From contig JAADVB010000193.1 of assembly GCA_023334545.1 (NCBI GenBank), positions 1-36,832 of the forward strand: a stretch of DNA of 36,832 nt, read 5' to 3'. This document shows positions 10,432-19,261 of the stretch, piece by piece (position 1 is the first letter of the stretch; the number at the start of each line of letters is the position of its first letter). The translations under genes and the position numbers were made by a program. Source of the DNA: Salisapilia sapeloensis CBS 127946. Lineage: Eukaryota > Protista > Oomycota. Below the pieces are notes generated by a model that worked only from the letters and a program-made list of their open reading frames with translations, did no database searches and was not told the origin of the DNA.

Positions 10432-11334
10432 TCACGTCCATAGAGCTAGCATACCAAAGATACCGTAGCCGAGCAATAAGAACAAAATCTTGAGCCCAAT
10501 GTTCGACTTAACAGCACCGTGGCGAGGAAACTGTTTCGGAATCACTTCCATAACAGCTACGTAGATAAACGCTCCAGCGGAAAGCGCAATGCAGATACCG
10601 ACTCCAGCTGATCCATCGCTGTAATCAGCAATACCCCATCCAATGACGATTCCAATCACTGTCATAAGCGAAAAGGAAAAGATAAAAATGGCTGCTTGGC
10701 GATTCGATAAAGATGCCTCGATGAACTCTGTGCCAAGAGCGAAAGAAGCCAAACCTTTATGAGCGATGATTGCAATGAAAACATCCCATGCAGCGTCCGT
10801 TTGTGCACCAAGGCCAAGTCCTTCCAAGACCGAATGGAAACTTAGCGCAACAAAGAGACTTATTGCAACAGTGGCCGATGCCGTGTTATTTGTCAATTGA
10901 TGAGCATTAGCCAGGCCCTCATCGATCGGTGCGTCAATGAGGGTGTCTGCATGTGGCGACATGTTTTTCTCGTACGCGGGTGCTTCCAATGAGTGTGCAG
11001 ACTCCTCTTTTCCATTTGATGATGACATGTAGTGCTGAGCAGACTGCTCTAGAATGAGGACTAGAAGGAAGCCGATCGTACAGAAGAGCTGCGCATAGGG
11101 AAAATCGCCTCCCCAAGCAGCTAATCCTTCATTCTCGATCGCATCATTCAGCAAATGGATGAAGCCTCCTGCCAAAAAGACACCTCCTGTCGCCGATGTC
11201 ATCATCTCCAAGGCCAATTCCACACGTGGAGATTTGGAGCGAGATGCAAAGTAGACTGGCAATAGACCTCCAGCAATGGACACAGTCCAGATAACAATGA
11301 TTGAAATGATCTTGAACGTTTCTGCAGAATCCAT
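10432..11334 (-). CDS. ZIP-family (Zrt/Irt-like) zinc/iron transporter (300 aa)
   Basis: GGVFLAGGFIHLL (TM2), ALSFHSVLEGLGLGA (TM4 signature), AIIAHKGLASFALG (TM5), SAGAFIYVAVMEVIP; about 8 TM helices. Confidence 0.93.
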   Translation of the reverse strand: MDSAETFKIISIIVIWTVSIAGGLLPVYFASRSKSPRVELALEMMTSATGGVFLAGGFIHLLNDAIENEGLAAWGGDFPYAQLFCTIGFLLVLILEQSAQHYMSSSNGKEESAHSLEAPAYEKNMSPHADTLIDAPIDEGLANAHQLTNNTASATVAISLFVALSFHSVLEGLGLGAQTDAAWDVFIAIIAHKGLASFALGTEFIEASLSNRQAAIFIFSFSLMTVIGIVIGWGIADYSDGSAGVGICIALSAGAFIYVAVMEVIPKQFPRHGAVKSNIGLKILFLLLGYGIFGMLALWT

Positions 11335-12180: not shown

Positions 12181-14007
12181 TCAAGGAGATTTGGGTCGAG
12201 ATCGACTCATTCGACCACTCGGAGCGACGTGGGCTTCCATAAATCTGAGAAAGCGATCTCCATATACGTCTGGTGGAACTGCTGAAATCTCGTTTCGGTC
12301 GTGGCGGAAGCCTTTGATCACATTCTCCGCCATCTTTCGACTGTTGTACTGCTGCAAAACATCAATGATTCCTAAAAAGTAGACCGGTCCGGTCAGTCGG
12401 CCACGTCGATCTCTAGCCGCGACTCCACCATCGTCCTGACAAAATACAGACGGATCTTGGTCTGTAGATCCCAACGACTTTGTCTTATCATCAAAATCCT
12501 CTGCCTCATGCCAATGCTGTGACCCGATTGGTGTATCAACAGATTCATCGCCGCTATCGTCCACATTGCTCGAGGAAGATTTATCATCTACGTTGTTCTC
12601 CACAGCCCAGACCTCTTCCGCGGATGTCACGAAAGCCGTCGCATCCGACATTCGACGTCCTACCGTTGTTTCCACGCTCCGCACAATGGTAGCAGGAGAA
12701 GTAACTTCTTCATCTATCCTCAATTTCGCAGGTGGGTCAGATTCCGATCGAGTCGATCTCCAAAACTTTTCAGCCCCTGCCATCGGAGAATTTGGAAGCG
12801 ACTTGGAGGTGCTCCAGTTTGATTTCAGTTCAGGTATGCGCATGTGCTGAGCAACTTTCCTCCTCCTGGTGCATGTGTTGAATGGATTCTGACGTCCAGT
12901 GGGGTCATGCACGCCTACTAGTAGGCTGTAGTCCATTATCTTCATCTGCTTTAGAAACTCAACATCCTGTTGGAGCTGGACCAGAAAGATAGCTCGACGT
13001 TGCGTACCAAGTTGGAGATGAAAGTTAGCGTCGATTAAATCCAAATCCTTCAATACGGTATCTTGATTGACTTGTTCCTGCTGCTCGGCTCCACTCTGCT
13101 CTTCCGTTTCTTGCTTTGGTTCAGGCAAGGAACGACGGCCGACTGTTGATCCTTTCAGGTCAAATTTCCAATGCACCTCAAGAGGAGAGTAGAAGACACT
13201 CGCCATGATAACAAAGTGCGTCTTTCGATTCACATGCCTTGTCCGCATCTCCACTCGGTGTAGCCCATAGAAACGTGGCAACAATGTGTGTGGGTGCTCC
13301 ATGACGAAACGATAATAGTGAGGTAGCATGCGACGCAAGCACTTAGACTCATCCTTCGTTTGTGTCTTGATAAGAAATCGACCATCGTGCGAGTAGAAGA
13401 AGAACTGGCCAGACTTGGAGTTGCTGAGAAACTCTAGGAAACTGTGTTCATCGCCACCTTTGCACAGCGTCAAGATGTAGTCCATCGAATCGAGTGCGAA
13501 CCGACCGCGTAGTCGACGAAAGACTTCTGGGGCATAGTCTTTAAACTTAAACGTGTGCGGCTGTGGAGCATTCGCTTTAAAAGTATGCTTCTCAATACGT
13601 GAAAAGTCTCCCAGACTTAGTCGCTGCCGAAACAGCACTTGAGTCTGTAAACCAGCAGACTTGAGTATTCCTCGCATCATCCCATAAGTTAGCGCGTACT
13701 GAGCGTGCTTGGAATGGATGACTGTTCCCGGTGGCGTTCGAAAGCCCTGTAGGTTAAATGAATCGCTAGAATGTCGGACATGCGTTTCGGTCCGTGACTT
13801 TGTCTTCTTCTTCTTTCCCTGCTCAGTCTTTGATCCTTCATACTCTTCGTAGTCATCGTTTGGAATCTCAAGTGAAATTGAGGACAGAGCTAATGTCGGA
13901 GCCGCTGCTTGAAGGCGATCGGACTTGCTGCGATTCCTTTGATCTCCCGCCAGGTCGGACTCACTTGCGGAGGGGACAGCAATCATCGTCAAGTGTTCCG
14001 TGGCCAT
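12181..14007 (-). CDS. Phosphatidylinositol phosphate kinase (PIP5K family), about 608 aa
   Basis: FKFKDYAPEVF, SKSGQFFFYSHDGRFLIKT, FDLKGS, LKDLD, MDYSLLVGVH, YFLGIIDVLQQY, ISAVPPDVYGDRF. First ATG at 14007. Confidence 0.93.
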   Translation of the reverse strand: MATEHLTMIAVPSASESDLAGDQRNRSKSDRLQAAAPTLALSSISLEIPNDDYEEYEGSKTEQGKKKKTKSRTETHVRHSSDSFNLQGFRTPPGTVIHSKHAQYALTYGMMRGILKSAGLQTQVLFRQRLSLGDFSRIEKHTFKANAPQPHTFKFKDYAPEVFRRLRGRFALDSMDYILTLCKGGDEHSFLEFLSNSKSGQFFFYSHDGRFLIKTQTKDESKCLRRMLPHYYRFVMEHPHTLLPRFYGLHRVEMRTRHVNRKTHFVIMASVFYSPLEVHWKFDLKGSTVGRRSLPEPKQETEEQSGAEQQEQVNQDTVLKDLDLIDANFHLQLGTQRRAIFLVQLQQDVEFLKQMKIMDYSLLVGVHDPTGRQNPFNTCTRRRKVAQHMRIPELKSNWSTSKSLPNSPMAGAEKFWRSTRSESDPPAKLRIDEEVTSPATIVRSVETTVGRRMSDATAFVTSAEEVWAVENNVDDKSSSSNVDDSGDESVDTPIGSQHWHEAEDFDDKTKSLGSTDQDPSVFCQDDGGVAARDRRGRLTGPVYFLGIIDVLQQYNSRKMAENVIKGFRHDRNEISAVPPDVYGDRFLRFMEAHVAPSGRMSRSRPKSP

Positions 14008-14070
14008 CACAGCTATATTCCTCACTTTTGAATAGTCTTGTGACGTCCTAAGCGTATGATAGTTGGAGAA

Positions 14071-16055: not shown

Positions 16056-16096
16056 GCTATTCGCCGCGTCCTGCGCAAGTCTCGAGTACGTTGAAC

Positions 16097-18793
16097 ATGG
16101 CGAGTGGACAAGGAAGCGATATGGATGACGCCACGTCCAGTTTCATGGCGATGCTCCATCCATCCGACGCGCCGTCGGAGGAACATCCGCGACAGACGCA
16201 ATACGGCACTGTCCGACGGCCGAGTGCCGACTGCTCTTGCAGTCGTTGCAGTAGTCACCATCATAGCAGTCGCCACGCTAGTCACCGCGGAAGTCAGTCT
16301 CGACCTTCACAAGGCCACCATTTTCATCACATGAAAAGCTCGCAACAGCTCCAGGAACGAACGAGATCGTTGTTGAAGCAGCAAAGCACGCGGAATCCCA
16401 AGTCACAGGACGAAACGATCATGTATTCCGAGCAGGATGCAAACGATATCATTCTAGCAGCGAATGCACCACCGTCTTACTCTGGCAATTTTGACGAGAT
16501 CATGAACCAGATTCGAGCGCAAAGGTACTACCAGAAGCAGTTTCAACGCGTGCAGGCACAAACCGAGATGAGTCGATTCTTGTACTTTTCCAATCATGAC
16601 GAGACCAAGTACGAGAGCAGGTACTTGGCACTAGCTCAGAACGCGTCCGTCAACCGCGTCCGTTTCTGTTTCTTGCTCGGCATGATCAGCCTCTTTGCAC
16701 TCTACTTCAGCGAAATGAGGAATGGCGATTGGGATCCGGATGACAAGGTCGGACGGACGGAGAGCGACAAGCTCGCGACGACTATCTTGTGCTTTGGCGG
16801 GATGCTACCTGTCTTGTTCTTGGGCATCATGTCGACATTTTCGGGAATCGGACGAGTGCATTTAGAAAACGTGACCGTCGCCGTCTTTCTGATCATCGGG
16901 GAATTGATGATCGTCAAGAAGCCGCTGTCCAAGACGAAAGGTCCGGTCATCCCATTGCTCATTCTTCTCATTCCAGTCTTTGGTATCACCAGGATGAGGT
17001 TTGCCAAGTCGTGCTGTGTCGGATGGGGACTCCTTGTCTCCTACTTGATCGTCCAAATCTCCGCGCGCCATGCTTTCCTCCCAAAACCAGACGCATTCGA
17101 CTCCTCCACGGCATTGTCATACCAGACGATCAACTACGGCATCGCTATCATCGGTGGCATGGTCTCCCAGTACCGTCAAGAGCTGCTACGTCGTCGGAAT
17201 TTTGCACTACGTCTACCCTTCTCTGGCACGCTCGACGCCGAATCACTGTTCGAAATGTCTGTCCACAAATTCGCCCGGAGAGATCTCTTGACGTGGTACA
17301 ACCTTAAATTCAACCACCCGGACGTGGAAGAGTGTTTCTACAAGTACTGGTACCTCATCGACGCGTTTCCGTATCAAAATCCAAACTCTGGAAGTCTCCA
17401 TCAAGGTGTTTTCCGTGTCATCCGCTTCGCCATCTCGACTCTCCTTTTGAATCAAGTCGTGCTCGTCCTCCAGGACTATAAACTGTTAAAACTGCCGGAA
17501 GGACGTCTCGCACGAGAGTTTAACACAGCCATCATCCTCCGTCTAGGCATCACCGTCCCTCTGTACCTTAGTGCCGCACTTGTCATGTATGTTCTCGGCA
17601 AAGCATTTTTCAATTTGTGGGTGAAGCAGGCGGAGGATGCCAAGAACGAAGCGCTGCGAGACTCGTTCACACTCGACGTCCCGCCCAGCATCTCCTCCTC
17701 TCCTTCCTCTCCTTCCTCTCCCTACAGCTCTGCTTCTCCATCGTCTCCCAGGAGCCCTCTCATCCTGAACAACGCGTCGTCACCGATTAAAGACGGACAG
17801 TATCCCCAAGCCTTCGAAGACTACAGTCGTTCGCCAGCCATGAAAGACGTGGCGGAAGAAGCCATGGAGCAGAGGTACTCTAGCAACACCATGGACAGCA
17901 ACACTAGCTCCAATCGTCCGACGTCCTCACAGGAAAAGTCCAAGTACCACAACACGATCTATCAGAACACGGAGCCGTATCCAGAGTACGAAGGTGCATC
18001 CGACTACTCTCGTGCGTCCTCTCCGAGAGGAGACAAGAGGAGCTTCAAGCAGCATCTAGTCGATTCCTATGAGACCATCAAGGACAGCGTGCTGCACATC
18101 CTACTGGCAAAAGGAGGCTACGTACGTACGTCCCAGCTCTACGCTTGCATCGTCATCACTACCCACGTCGGATGCATGGGCGCTCTACTCCTCGTGGTAT
18201 CCTCTGGCGTCCGGCCGCAGCCGGTATACTACATGGGTTTCCTCAACGCCGTCCTCTTCGCCCACCGCAGTGGCTTCCGCGTCCGATTCGTGTATGCCAC
18301 CATCTCGACGTTCATCGTTAGCTTTGGCGTCGTCTTGTGTGCTGCATTCTTCACACCAGACTACTGGAAGGAGTATGCAGGCTACATGGCCGTCATGTTC
18401 GTCCTCGGGATGATGATCAGCTACGAGGAAGAGTCTCTCCGTCGCACGTTTTTCATCCTCAAGAGCATGCGAATGCTCGAGTTTGAAGAGTGGTTTGGCG
18501 TCGTCTTGCGTGTGCAGAATTGGGTCAAGGAAAAGTTTCGTAAGCGATTGGAACGCATTCGAGAGAAGCAACGACAAGAGTATCAAGGTAGCGTCAAGAG
18601 CCTCGTGGACATTATGGACGCGAATCAACATACATGGACGCAGAGCATGCGGACGCGACTAGTAAAACCCCATCGGCCAAGTCCGAAAGTCATCGAGACG
18701 TCGTCGCAACTGGCCATGGCGAGCAAGATGGGCATGTACGCCCAACTCGTCAACATCATCATCGCGCTCGTCGACGTTCTCACGAGCATGTAG
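16097..18793 (+). CDS. Polytopic membrane protein (898 aa) with two cyclase/PDE-like 6-TM modules and no recognisable catalytic domain
   Basis: Long intact ORF with about 12 hydrophobic segments in two blocks. Each block opens with LxF...E..Y and closes with E.LRR.(N/F)F. The CDS is secure; the family call is inferred. Confidence 0.85.
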   Translation: MASGQGSDMDDATSSFMAMLHPSDAPSEEHPRQTQYGTVRRPSADCSCSRCSSHHHSSRHASHRGSQSRPSQGHHFHHMKSSQQLQERTRSLLKQQSTRNPKSQDETIMYSEQDANDIILAANAPPSYSGNFDEIMNQIRAQRYYQKQFQRVQAQTEMSRFLYFSNHDETKYESRYLALAQNASVNRVRFCFLLGMISLFALYFSEMRNGDWDPDDKVGRTESDKLATTILCFGGMLPVLFLGIMSTFSGIGRVHLENVTVAVFLIIGELMIVKKPLSKTKGPVIPLLILLIPVFGITRMRFAKSCCVGWGLLVSYLIVQISARHAFLPKPDAFDSSTALSYQTINYGIAIIGGMVSQYRQELLRRRNFALRLPFSGTLDAESLFEMSVHKFARRDLLTWYNLKFNHPDVEECFYKYWYLIDAFPYQNPNSGSLHQGVFRVIRFAISTLLLNQVVLVLQDYKLLKLPEGRLAREFNTAIILRLGITVPLYLSAALVMYVLGKAFFNLWVKQAEDAKNEALRDSFTLDVPPSISSSPSSPSSPYSSASPSSPRSPLILNNASSPIKDGQYPQAFEDYSRSPAMKDVAEEAMEQRYSSNTMDSNTSSNRPTSSQEKSKYHNTIYQNTEPYPEYEGASDYSRASSPRGDKRSFKQHLVDSYETIKDSVLHILLAKGGYVRTSQLYACIVITTHVGCMGALLLVVSSGVRPQPVYYMGFLNAVLFAHRSGFRVRFVYATISTFIVSFGVVLCAAFFTPDYWKEYAGYMAVMFVLGMMISYEEESLRRTFFILKSMRMLEFEEWFGVVLRVQNWVKEKFRKRLERIREKQRQEYQGSVKSLVDIMDANQHTWTQSMRTRLVKPHRPSPKVIETSSQLAMASKMGMYAQLVNIIIALVDVLTSM

Positions 18794-19190
18794 CACTGCT
18801 AGTTTTAGATGGTACAGCTACGGTACACTACAATTGAATTGTGCATCTTTTTACATTTCTTTCTTTTGACTCTTTTGTCGCATACGATCGAAGCAGGCGG
18901 TACATACAAGGTACACAATTCGATGAAATTTTCGTGTTACCTCAAGTGTCTTGGACTTGACTTTGGACTGCGGGATGGGATGCTACTGTACAGTCCACAG
19001 TGGCAAGTGGGATTGATTGTGCTTGATTCGGGACGATGTAGGTAATTCCGCACCCCTTGCGATACGAAGCTTCTGGTGCATTTTCTCTTAAGAATACTAG
19101 GTTCAATTTTCTTGACCGGACGACTCTATCCCGCCGTGAAGGCTTTCGAACCACTTTTTCGTGCTCTTTCCACTTGCTTTTGCTATCGAC

Positions 19191-19197
19191 GCTCATT
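19191..19197 (+). promoter_or_regulatory. Inr of the TKL kinase gene
   Basis: GCTCATT, the canonical oomycete Inr start, about 65 nt upstream of the ATG at 19262. Confidence 0.55.
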
Positions 19198-19261
19198 ATC
19201 ACACTTGCCGTCCTGCACCCACCCACCCATAGCACTTTCCAATTCACTTGGCTTTTGTATC

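What the first reader, a model, noticed from the sequence alone, without database searches (positions are those of the whole stretch)
16097..18793. Cyclase-less 12-TM protein: two adenylyl cyclase/PDE-type membrane modules with no catalytic domain
Seen: two 6-TM blocks. Block 1 (about 16580-17205) opens LYFSNHDETKYESRYL and closes YRQELLRRRNF. Block 2 (about 17303-18460) opens LKFNHPDVEECFYKYW, carries a long Ser/Pro-rich loop, and closes YEEESLRRTFF. Established: membrane class III adenylyl/guanylyl cyclases and protist membrane PDEs flank each 6-TM module with the same kind of LxF...E..Y and E...R..FL helices. Seen: only about 35 aa separate the blocks and about 110 aa follow block 2, too little for a ~200-aa cyclase domain. 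No FADIVGFT, KTIGD or PDE HDxxH motif is present. Inference: a stand-alone sensory or regulatory membrane module that could act in trans on a cyclase/PDE, or a pseudo-cyclase. This is the best candidate here for an undescribed signalling component.
Basis: partly seen in the sequence, partly recalled or inferred. Interest (0 to 1): 0.75.

Follow-up and report, generated by a model that had tools for sequence, protein, structure and literature searches.

The report
Adenylyl-cyclase membrane domain without a cyclase
This oomycete gene encodes the complete 12-helix membrane domain of an animal-type adenylyl cyclase with no enzyme part attached, so this long-enigmatic membrane domain probably has a function of its own that can now be studied apart from the cyclase.

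Summary
About 60 orthologues across oomycetes and divergent marine-plankton relatives share the architecture. None of the 48 aligned members, nor any other relative scanned, has a Pfam domain.

A template-free AlphaFold model (TM regions mostly pLDDT >90) matches only membrane adenylyl cyclase TM domains in an unbiased search of 48,161 PDB chains. AC9 scores Z 22.1 and AC5 Z 22.0 over about 380-430 residues spanning both blocks. The 6-TM diguanylate cyclase ImcA scores Z 16.3, M. tuberculosis Cya 9.8 and background 9.7 or less.

A profile search of 1.84 billion proteins finds, outside the family, 6-TM modules fused to class III cyclases and histidine kinases. By hhalign, block 1 scores 99.5% (E 1e-22) and block 2 scores 98.4% (E 6e-15).

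The protein is therefore a stand-alone cyclase-type sensor domain, not a pseudo-cyclase or a truncated copy. It is not a recent derivative of the genome's own P4-ATPase guanylyl cyclases.

The mechanism is inferred. I think a membrane-embedded (lipid?) receptor signals through conserved juxtamembrane helices and a positionally conserved IQ-like motif after TM12. I found no published description.

The parts
16097..18793 (+). Complete single-exon CDS (898 aa plus stop) of the cyclase-less 12-TM protein
   Evidence: ORF listing. The N- and C-termini align with about 60 oomycete orthologues. It is single-copy in its own genome.
16097..16426 (+). Disordered N-terminal region (aa 1-110) with a lineage-specific His/Ser/Cys-rich insertion
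   Evidence: pLDDT is below 50. The insertion is absent from homologues in alignment A1.
16430..16558 (+). Conserved cytosolic N-terminal helices (aa 112-154; DAN..IL.ANAPP and Q-F-..-Q motifs)
   Evidence: Nearly invariant columns. Helices H112-122 and H132-154 in the model.
16568..17212 (+). Block 1 (aa 158-372): pre-TM1 helix (L-x-F...E..Y), TM1-TM6, the TM4-5 loop motif TRMRF, and the post-TM6 helix E-LL-RRR-NF
   Evidence: Hydropathy. Model pLDDT is mostly 90-98. hhalign against cyclase and kinase 6-TM modules gives 99.5%, E 1.2e-22 over 194 columns. ImcA scores Z 16.3 at rmsd 2.8 A on aa 157-378.
17213..17302 (+). Short inter-block linker (aa 373-402; invariant L-P-F-x-G), too short for a catalytic domain
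   Evidence: Alignment; no Pfam domain.
17303..17668 (+). Block 2, first part (aa 403-524): pre-TM7 helix (L-x-F...VEE.F), the conserved WYLID-FPY-NPN insert, TM7, and TM8 with its cytosolic extension
   Evidence: hhalign of block 2 against cyclase and kinase modules gives 98.4%, E 5.6e-15 over 197 columns.
17669..18034 (+). Ser/Pro-rich disordered cytosolic loop between TM8 and TM9 (aa 525-646); an in-frame insertion of about 120 aa relative to the homologues' shorter loops
   Evidence: pLDDT is mostly below 60, with 537-580 and 599-643 below 50. The insertion is gapped in all homologues. There are 31 Ser and 15 Pro in 123 aa. The frame is open while the other frames carry stops, so it is coding and not an intron.
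18035..18466 (+). Block 2, second part (aa 647-790): KGGYV helix, TM9-TM12, the TM10-11 loop motif HRSGFRVRF, and the post-TM12 motif EEESLRR-FF
   Evidence: The structural alignment to AC9, AC8 and AC5 runs through aa 798-812.
18467..18592 (+). Long cytosolic continuation of the TM12 helix (aa 791-832) carrying an IQ-like motif (V806-K816, nt 18512-18544)
   Evidence: Helix H757-832. The pattern [ILV]Q-x3-[RK]-x4-[RK] is present in 41 of 48 members. The divergent relative P0106 has a near-threshold Pfam IQ hit (19.2 bits, cut-off 20.3) at the same spacing from the RR motif.
18698..18787 (+). Conserved C-terminal amphipathic/hydrophobic helix (aa 868-897; A-S-K-x-G-x-Y-x-Q ... D-V)
   Evidence: Helix H868-897 with pLDDT about 78-83. 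It is conserved to the last residues in homologues. Weak hydropathy peak of 1.43.

Best explanation
The gene encodes a stand-alone, pseudo-heterodimeric 2x6-TM membrane domain of the type that anchors class IIIa adenylyl/guanylyl cyclases. In bacteria the same 6-TM module is fused to cyclases, histidine kinases and a diguanylate cyclase. Here both catalytic domains are absent, and this has been the conserved state across oomycetes and some marine relatives. That much is shown. The rest is inferred. Homologous modules are everywhere signal-input domains. This family keeps their transmitter face under strong constraint: the TM4-5 R-x-R-F loop and the post-TM6/TM12 E-x3-RR-x-F helices. I therefore think it works as a membrane-embedded ligand sensor, probably for a lipid-like molecule, as reported for mammalian ACs, Rv1625c and CqsS. 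Its conformational change would be read non-covalently by cytosolic partners. The most likely docking site is the long post-TM12 helix with its positionally conserved IQ-like motif, with calmodulin or a calmodulin-like protein as the probable partner. The conserved N-terminal helices, the WYLID-FPYENPN insert and the C-terminal helix could contribute. My confidence in the identity (AC-type TM domain, no catalytic domain, functional gene) is about 0.9. My confidence in the sensor-plus-IQ output mechanism is about 0.35-0.4.
For: Fold. The AF2 model was built without templates from the family's own alignment (pTM 0.74, TM regions mostly pLDDT >90). Foldseek's top hits are the human AC9 TM domain (E 2e-4, TM-score 0.63-0.70 on the target), then AC5, AC8 and bovine AC9. 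VIA-align gives Z 22-23.6 at rmsd about 4 A over 380-446 residues, model 166..804 against AC9 98..1026. The unbiased scan of 48,161 chains ranks AC9 at 22.1, AC5 at 22.0, ImcA at 16.3 and Mtb Cya at 9.8; everything else is 9.7 or less.

Sequence. A profile search of 1.84e9 proteins finds only 75 hits. Outside the family these include 6TM+Guanylate_cyc proteins (P0119, and P0125 as read from its sequence), a two-cyclase eukaryotic protein (P0127) and 6TM+HisKA/HATPase kinases (P0101, P0122-P0124). hhalign gives 99.5%/E 1.2e-22 for block 1 and 98.4%/E 5.6e-15 for block 2 over the whole module. P0119 itself aligns contiguously with human AC5 from its TM region into C1. The ESM Atlas places block 1 nearest AC_N clusters at 0.95 and 0.93. 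The two blocks align collinearly with each other.

No catalytic domain. There is no Pfam family in any of the 48 members or in the divergent relatives.

Constraint. There are about 60 orthologues and about 75 invariant columns concentrated in TM helices and juxtamembrane motifs.

IQ-like motif.

Receptor precedent for this fold. PMC4821796, PMC11606603, PMC12505454 and PMC9433096.
Against: No ligand, partner or localisation is known. The window protein's own IQ-like motif (VQNWVKEKFRK) does not reach any Pfam IQ score; only one divergent relative nearly does. HMMER with the family profile finds no PDB sequence, so the link to mammalian ACs rests on fold plus intermediate sequences. The bacterial modules used for hhalign were picked from hits of the same profile, which inflates those E-values; the whole-database E-values of 3e-10 to 6e-4 are the unbiased ones. 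The extracellular TM3-4 loop is Lys-rich, which is unusual for an outside loop, and I have not explained it. A non-signalling role of the fold cannot be excluded.
Confidence: 0.6

Rival explanations
1. The protein is a trans-acting regulatory subunit of a cyclase or PDE. It would associate through TM-TM or helical-domain contacts with the genome's P4-ATPase guanylyl cyclases or 7TM-cyclase proteins and tune cNMP synthesis.
For: The TM region of the homologous ImcA is required for its interaction with the membrane partner IsmP (PMC10904736). AC5 forms TM-mediated dimers (8sl4). The genome encodes two P4-GCs, a 7TM-cyclase, an 884-aa non-TM single-cyclase-domain protein and two shorter single-cyclase-domain ORFs of uncertain completeness.
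Against: Both halves of the pseudo-dimer are present in one chain, so no unpaired 6-TM face is left to complement a cyclase half. The similarity to the own-genome P4-GC TM modules is only marginal (E 0.007-0.6). No cyclase-transducer element was recognised. No co-occurrence or interaction data exist.
Confidence: 0.15
2. The AC-type 12-TM fold is used here for a non-signalling membrane job, such as lipid handling or scramblase-like activity, ion conduction, or scaffolding of a membrane complex.
For: Conserved polar residues sit within TM helices (Q343, N346, Q453, Q459/D460, H690, N717). The function of AC TM domains is still called a blind spot (PMC12414865).
Against: Every characterised or annotated relative of the module is fused to a signalling output: cyclase, histidine kinase or GGDEF. 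The most conserved parts are the cytosolic transmitter motifs, not a pore-like path. No transporter or channel appears among the structural matches above background.
Confidence: 0.15
3. The gene is a decaying or truncated cyclase, or a mis-delimited gene whose catalytic exons or the downstream TKL kinase (19076-20794, same strand) belong to it.
For: A kinase gene follows 283 bp downstream on the same strand. Eukaryotic gene models can miss exons.
Against: The stop position and the last residues are conserved in about 50 independently predicted orthologues from Peronosporales to Saprolegniales. There are no in-frame stops. About 75 columns are invariant. No family member of any length has a cyclase or kinase domain. 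The kinase ORF has its own ATG and a long low-complexity N-terminus.
Confidence: 0.03

Closest known systems
Mammalian membrane adenylyl cyclases AC9, AC8 and AC5 (TM domain; PDB 6r3q, 9u3q-v, 8buz, 8sl3)
   Same: The 12-helix pseudo-heterodimeric TM fold is the same, made of two 6-TM halves in one chain, with TM6 and TM12 continuing as cytosolic helices. Z is 22-23.6 over about 380-446 residues. The inferred N-in topology is also the same.
   Different: There are no C1/C2 catalytic domains, no recognisable cyclase-transducer element and no Pfam AC_N match. Identity is only about 10-12% in the structural alignment. The TM6 extension is short. The protein has an IQ-like helix and a C-terminal helix instead of C2.
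Bacterial 6-TM class IIIa adenylyl cyclases (Rv1625c/Cya type; metagenomic P0119 and P0125)
   Same: The whole 6-TM module is profile-homologous, and the signature motifs are shared: pre-TM1 T-L-x-F...L-E..Y/F, the TM4-5 loop R-x-R-F/Y and post-TM6 E-x3-R-[RK]-x-F. P0119 in turn aligns with the AC5 TM1-C1 region.
   Different: The bacterial proteins are homodimers of 6TM-CTE-cyclase. The oomycete protein is a tandem 6TM+6TM with no output domain. Mtb Cya itself matches only at Z 9.8.
6-TM sensor histidine kinases (P0101, P0122-P0124) and, from the literature, the CqsS quorum sensor
   Same: The same 6-TM module sits N-terminal to the output in P0101 and P0122-P0124. The literature shows that 6-TM anchors of CqsS and cyclases are functionally interchangeable and that CqsS binds a lipid-like ligand in the membrane (PMC4821796).
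   Different: The kinases carry HisKA/HATPase (with or without a receiver) after TM6. Whether CqsS itself belongs to the same sequence family as the metagenomic kinases found here was not tested.
Pseudomonas aeruginosa ImcA (6-TM diguanylate cyclase; PDB 8wcn)
   Same: Block 1 superposes at Z 16.3 and rmsd 2.8 A over 200 residues. The ImcA TM domain mediates partner binding and is needed for activity (PMC10904736).
   Different: ImcA has a GGDEF output domain and is a homodimer.
P4-ATPase guanylyl cyclases of stramenopiles and alveolates (two copies in this genome)
   Same: They contain 2x6-TM cyclase modules with similar opening (L-x-F...E.EY) and closing (E...RR..L) helices (PMC13466520).
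   Different: They have a flippase module and two catalytic domains. Their TM modules are only marginally similar to this family (E 0.007-0.6), so this protein is not a recent P4-GC derivative.

Membership tests
Membrane class III adenylyl/guanylyl cyclase (mAC-type pseudo-heterodimer) | Twelve-helix TM domain made of two 6-TM halves with the mAC fold | tested here: met
   AC9, AC8 and AC5 score Z 22-23.6 at rmsd about 4 A over 380-446 aligned residues. They are the top hits in Foldseek and in the unbiased VIA scan.
Membrane class III adenylyl/guanylyl cyclase (mAC-type pseudo-heterodimer) | Two cyclase homology domains (Pfam PF00211) after TM6 and TM12 | tested here: not met
   There is no PF00211 hit at E<=1 in the window protein or in any of 48 family members. 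Only 33 aa follow block 1 and 112 aa follow block 2. No catalytic motifs are present.
Membrane class III adenylyl/guanylyl cyclase (mAC-type pseudo-heterodimer) | Helical domain or cyclase-transducer element linking TM6/TM12 to the catalytic core | tested here: inconclusive
   The TM12 helix continues to aa 832 and aligns with the start of the AC helical domain, up to AC9 residues 1026-1032. The TM6 extension ends at aa 372. No CTE-like L-P motif at the cyclase spacing was recognised by eye.
Membrane class III adenylyl/guanylyl cyclase (mAC-type pseudo-heterodimer) | Pfam AC_N (PF16214) sequence match | tested here: not met
   There is no hit at E<=1. The ESM Atlas feature search does place block 1 next to AC_N clusters at 0.95 and 0.93, which is a lead only.
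6-TM signal-input module shared by bacterial class IIIa cyclases, histidine kinases and ImcA | Profile-level homology over the whole six-helix module | tested here: met
   Whole-database HMM E-values are 3e-10 to 6e-4. hhalign gives 99.5%/E 1.2e-22 for block 1 and 98.4%/E 5.6e-15 for block 2.
6-TM signal-input module shared by bacterial class IIIa cyclases, histidine kinases and ImcA | Signature motifs: pre-TM1 L-x-F...E..Y/F, TM4-5 loop R-x-R-F/Y, post-TM6 E-x3-R-[RK]-x-F | tested here: met
   All three are present, and invariant or nearly so, in both halves: TRMRF and GFRVRF, E-LL-RRR-NF and EEESLRR-FF.
6-TM signal-input module shared by bacterial class IIIa cyclases, histidine kinases and ImcA | Covalently attached cytosolic output domain (cyclase, HisKA/HATPase, GGDEF) | tested here: not met
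   There is no Pfam domain anywhere in the protein or in its family.
IQ-motif calmodulin-binding proteins | IQ motif (Pfam PF00612 or the pattern [FILV]Q-x3-[RK]-G-x3-[RK]-x2-[FILVWY]) | tested here: inconclusive
   The loose pattern is present in 41 of 48 members and the strict pattern in none of the 48. There is no Pfam IQ hit in the 48. The divergent relative P0106 scores 19.2 bits against a cut-off of 20.3 at the same spacing from the RR motif.
IQ-motif calmodulin-binding proteins | Binding of calmodulin or an EF-hand light chain | not testable with these tools
   This needs a binding assay.
Protist membrane phosphodiesterases | PDEase_I catalytic domain with the HD-x2-H metal site | tested here: not met
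   There is no Pfam PDE hit and no HDxxH motif.
Protist membrane phosphodiesterases | TM module homologous to the PDE N-terminal 6-TM region | not tested
Pseudo-cyclase (pseudo-enzyme retaining a degenerate cyclase fold) | A recognisable but inactivated cyclase homology domain | tested here: not met
   No globular cytosolic domain is predicted. The regions outside the TM blocks are single helices or disordered, and there is no PF00211 match.

The most novel reading that the evidence does not exclude
This would be the first natural 'TM-only' relative of membrane adenylyl cyclases. It is an autonomous 12-TM receptor that has been kept without any cyclase since before the oomycete radiation. Its output would go through a Ca2+/calmodulin-type IQ helix instead of cNMP synthesis. 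If so, the AC membrane domain is an independent sensory device with its own ligand, not an anchor, and this family offers a catalytic-domain-free system in which to find that ligand class.
Probability: 0.35. Interest if true: 0.85.

Novelty: new variant of a known kind. Interest (0 to 1): 0.7.

Why it matters
What the 12-helix membrane domain of adenylyl cyclases does has been an open question since 1989 and is still called a 'signal transduction blind spot' (PMC12414865). Recent work argues that it is a lipid receptor (PMC11606603, PMC12505454). A family that keeps this domain under strong purifying selection with no cyclase attached is natural evidence that the domain has a cyclase-independent function. 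It is also a cleaner system for finding ligands and downstream partners. The family is present in all sampled oomycete groups, including major plant and animal pathogens, and it is unannotated ('Transmembrane protein' or hypothetical, with no Pfam model). The work also shows that the 6-TM input module shared by bacterial cyclases and kinases has no Pfam model.

Tried and rejected
- **Pfam and PDB sequence searches.** Neither the protein nor the family profile gave any hit, so sequence alone does not link it to solved AC structures.
- **Derivation from the genome's own P4-ATPase guanylyl cyclase.** Rejected as a recent event: hhalign of blocks 1 and 2 against the two P4-GC TM modules gives only E 0.007-0.6. 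The bacterial-type set links to both block 1 and P4-GC module 1.
- **Split cyclase with a soluble partner.** I found no clear candidate. The other PF00211-bearing proteins are a large sAC-like protein with predicted nucleotide-binding, zinc-finger and PH-like regions as read by eye, a 7TM-cyclase, an 884-aa non-TM protein and two shorter single-cyclase-domain ORFs that may be incomplete. None has a CTE-like helix that I could recognise.
- **Longer Aphanomyces homologues (1225 and 1267 aa) as catalytic-domain carriers.** Rejected: they are two tandem family copies fused in one gene model.
- **The Ser/Pro-rich loop as an unspliced intron.** Rejected: it stays in frame for about 123 codons while the other frames carry stops.
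- **Literature searches for a prior description.** Nothing found.
- **Unused tools.** I did not run the second structure job or further large protein searches, because the result was already clear.
Full report
**1. Observation**

The + strand carries one open frame, 16091-18793, with its first ATG at 16097. It encodes 898 aa. Hydropathy gives six hydrophobic helices at aa 188-358. It gives six more at aa 438-775, split by a long loop.

Thirty-three residues separate the blocks and 112 follow block 2.

No F-x-D-I-x-G-F-T-like, K-T-I-G-D-like or H-D-x-x-H motif is present. Pfam finds nothing above noise.

**2. Gene model and family**

A word-indexed search found 60 homologues, all from oomycetes: Phytophthora, Pythium, Globisporangium, Peronospora, Bremia, Plasmopara, Albugo, Saprolegnia, Achlya, Thraustotheca and Aphanomyces. 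They are 53-62% identical to the window protein in Peronosporales, Pythiales and Albugo (BLASTP local alignments). They are 36-42% identical in Saprolegniales (alignment identity). They are annotated 'hypothetical' or 'Transmembrane protein', and none has a precomputed Pfam domain.

The alignments (A1 with 21 sequences; A2 with 48 sequences) show that both termini of the window ORF coincide with those of the homologues. About 75 columns are invariant. They are concentrated in these motifs:
- G-P-V-x-P-L...F-G-I-T-R-M-R-F
- Y-Q-x-x-N-Y...Y-R-Q-E-L-x-R-R-R-N
- W-Y-L-I-D-x-x-P
- Y-x-M-G-x-x-N...H-R-S-x-x-x-x-R
- E-E-E-x-L-R-R-x-F-F

Two stretches are specific to this organism: a His/Ser/Cys-rich N-terminal patch and a Ser/Pro-rich stretch of about 120 aa in the TM8-TM9 loop. 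The latter stays in frame for about 123 codons while the other frames have stops, so it is coding and not an intron.

The gene is single-copy in its own 22.4-Mb assembly. None of the 48 aligned members has any Pfam family at E<=1. The two long Aphanomyces astaci models (1225 and 1267 aa) are head-to-tail fusions of two tandem paralogues, not catalytic-domain carriers.

**3. Distant relatives**

I searched the family profile with HMMER against 1.84 billion representative proteins, with no length filter. Only 75 proteins scored E<=1e-3.

Beyond oomycetes there is a divergent eukaryotic branch. It comes from EukProt, Tara Oceans, ENA and Logan assemblies, and the taxon is unnamed. It includes P0084 (837 aa) and P0131 (822 aa), and it has no Pfam domain. 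The two-block architecture was verified for P0084 and, partially, for the incomplete P0094. The other members are fragments.

The remaining hits are informative:
- P0119 (442 aa) has six TM helices plus Guanylate_cyc. P0125 (446 aa) has the same architecture as read from its sequence; I did not scan it against Pfam.
- P0127 (1473 aa) has two cyclase domains, and its second TM module matches block 1.
- P0101, P0122, P0123 and P0124 have six TM helices plus HisKA/HATPase, with or without a receiver domain.

Their TM modules share three motifs with both halves of the oomycete protein:
- pre-TM1: T-L-x-F...L-E..Y/F
- TM4-5 loop: R-x-R-F/Y
- post-TM6: E-x3-R-[RK]-x-F

hhalign of block 1 against these eight modules gives 99.5% probability and E 1.2e-22 over 194 columns. 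Block 2 gives 98.4% and E 5.6e-15 over 197 columns. These values are inflated by the way the set was chosen. The unbiased figures are the whole-database E-values of 3e-10 to 6e-4.

The two blocks align collinearly with each other (204 columns, E 0.002). This points to an old internal duplication, or to descent from an already duplicated cyclase.

P0119 aligns contiguously with human AC5 from its TM2-6 region into C1 (query 65-412 against AC5 258-623). This closes a transitive sequence chain to mammalian ACs.

**4. Structure**

AlphaFold2 was run without templates on alignment A2. The model has pTM 0.74 and mean pLDDT 74.9, with the TM regions mostly above 90 and the disordered loops below 50.

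| Search | Match | Score |
|---|---|---|
| Foldseek against PDB | human AC9 TM domain (9u3q, 9u3v, 9u3s) | E 2e-4 to 4e-3, target-normalised TM-score 0.63-0.70; next come AC5, AC8 and bovine AC9 |
| VIA-align second look | AC9, AC8, AC5 | Z 22.0-23.6, rmsd 3.8-4.5 A, 379-446 aligned residues, model 159/166..797/812 against AC9 97/98..1020/1032 |
| VIA-align second look | ImcA (8wcn_B) on block 1 | Z 16.3, rmsd 2.8 A, 200 residues |
| VIA-align second look | next best hit | Z 8.2 |
| Foldseek-independent scan of 48,161 representatives | 6r3q_A / 8sl3_A / 8wcn_B / 7yzi_A (Mtb Cya) | Z 22.1 / 22.0 / 16.3 / 9.8; background 9.7 or less |

The AC alignments cover both halves plus the start of the helical domain. 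The ESM Atlas feature search independently places block 1 next to AC_N clusters. The fold assignment is therefore firm.

**5. What it is not**

- It is not a pseudo-cyclase. No globular cytosolic domain is predicted, and outside the TM blocks there are only helices and disorder.
- It is not a recent derivative of the genome's own P4-ATPase guanylyl cyclases (two loci; modules read). Their TM modules score only E 0.007-0.6 against blocks 1 and 2.
- It is not joined to the downstream TKL kinase, as far as conservation of the stop position in about 50 orthologues can tell. cDNA would settle this.

**6. Mechanism (inferred)**

Relatives of this module sit N-terminal to signalling outputs, including ImcA with its GGDEF domain.

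For this fold the literature reports membrane-embedded ligand sensing:
- CqsS anchors can replace the Rv1625c anchor and confer ligand control (PMC4821796).
- Fatty acids act on mammalian ACs (PMC11606603) and on Rv1625c (PMC12505454).
- The Cya structure suggests a receptor role (PMC9433096).
- The ImcA TM region is needed for partner binding (PMC10904736).

The oomycete family conserves the cytosolic transmitter motifs best. It also conserves cytosolic elements with no counterpart in cyclases. These are the N-terminal helices, the W-Y-L-I-D...N-P-N insert before TM7 and a K-G-G-Y-V helix before TM9. They also include a continuation of TM12 of about 55 residues and a C-terminal helix.

The TM12 continuation carries [ILV]-Q-x3-[RK]-x4-[RK] in 41 of 48 members. 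In the divergent relative P0106 the same position, 23-24 residues after the R-R motif, holds a canonical IQ motif. That motif scores 19.2 bits against a Pfam cut-off of 20.3.

I therefore propose a ligand-sensing 12-TM receptor whose state is read by calmodulin or a related protein on the post-TM12 helix. This is a hypothesis. The window protein's own motif does not score in Pfam.

**7. Rivals**

- **Trans-regulator of a cyclase or PDE (0.15).** This is possible by analogy with ImcA-IsmP and with AC dimers. But both halves of the pseudo-dimer are already present in one chain, and no specific link exists.
- **Non-signalling use of the fold (0.15).** This is not excluded.
- **Truncated or mis-delimited gene (0.03).** Conservation argues against it.

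**8. Context**

The neighbouring genes are:
- a ZIP transporter at 10435-11334 (-)
- a PIP5K at 12184-14025 (-)
- a TKL kinase at 19076-20794 (+)
- a 1434-aa ORF at 20993-25297 (-)

**9. Novelty**

I found no description of a catalytic-domain-free homologue of the AC membrane domain. The places searched were:
- a search on the Phytophthora orthologue's locus tag
- oomycete signalling papers
- the P4-GC survey
- an evolutionary review of mAC isoforms
- the 2025 review on AC TM domains
- a targeted full-text query

I class it as a new variant of a known kind. The fold and module are known. The stand-alone, output-less, deeply conserved architecture is not.

Noticed in passing
window 12184-14025(-), 19076-20794(+), 10435-11334(-): The 12-TM gene is flanked by a PIP5K (divergently transcribed) and, 283 bp downstream on the same strand, a TKL kinase with a long Lys/Glu-rich N-terminus. 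A ZIP zinc transporter lies further upstream.
   Followed up: partly
P0052 and P0059 (Aphanomyces astaci gene models): These two models of 1267 and 1225 aa are head-to-tail fusions of two complete family copies, so the paralogues are tandem in that genome. Saprolegniales have several paralogues, whereas the window's genome has one copy.
   Followed up: yes
P0101, P0119, P0122-P0125 (metagenomic bacterial proteins): The 6-TM input module shared by these cyclases and histidine kinases has strong motifs (T-L-x-F...L-E, P-P-P in the TM3-4 loop, R-x-R-F/Y, E-x3-R-[RK]-x-F). It received no Pfam match at E<=0.01 in the five proteins scanned (P0125 was not scanned), so it appears to be an unmodelled sensor domain family.
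   Followed up: partly
G000:C1200 (L013:1641-5747, minus strand): This is a 1368-aa soluble protein with two weak cyclase homology domains. By eye it is followed by a P-loop/STAND-like region, a Cys-rich FYVE-like finger and a PH-like C-terminus. It looks like an sAC-like multidomain cyclase. Only the cyclase domains were confirmed with a tool.
   Followed up: no
G000:C773 (L016:1390-3675, minus strand); G000:C426 and C623: The C773 ORF encodes a 762-aa protein with about seven TM helices followed by a divergent cyclase domain, which is GPCR-cyclase 'bigram'-like. Two shorter ORFs on C426 and C623 have the same divergent cyclase type and are probably 3' exons.
   Followed up: partly
window 17669-18034 and 16220-16350: Two low-complexity insertions are specific to this organism: a Ser/Pro-rich TM8-TM9 loop (31 Ser and 15 Pro in 123 aa) and a His/Ser/Cys-rich N-terminal patch. 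Both are absent from all homologues.
   Followed up: partly
window aa 275-283 (nt about 16919-16945): The TM3-TM4 loop is predicted to be extracellular by the AC topology. It is Lys-rich (K-K-P-x-x-K-x-K-G-P) and highly conserved in oomycetes, whereas the bacterial modules have P-P-P there. This is unusual under the positive-inside rule and I have not explained it.
   Followed up: no
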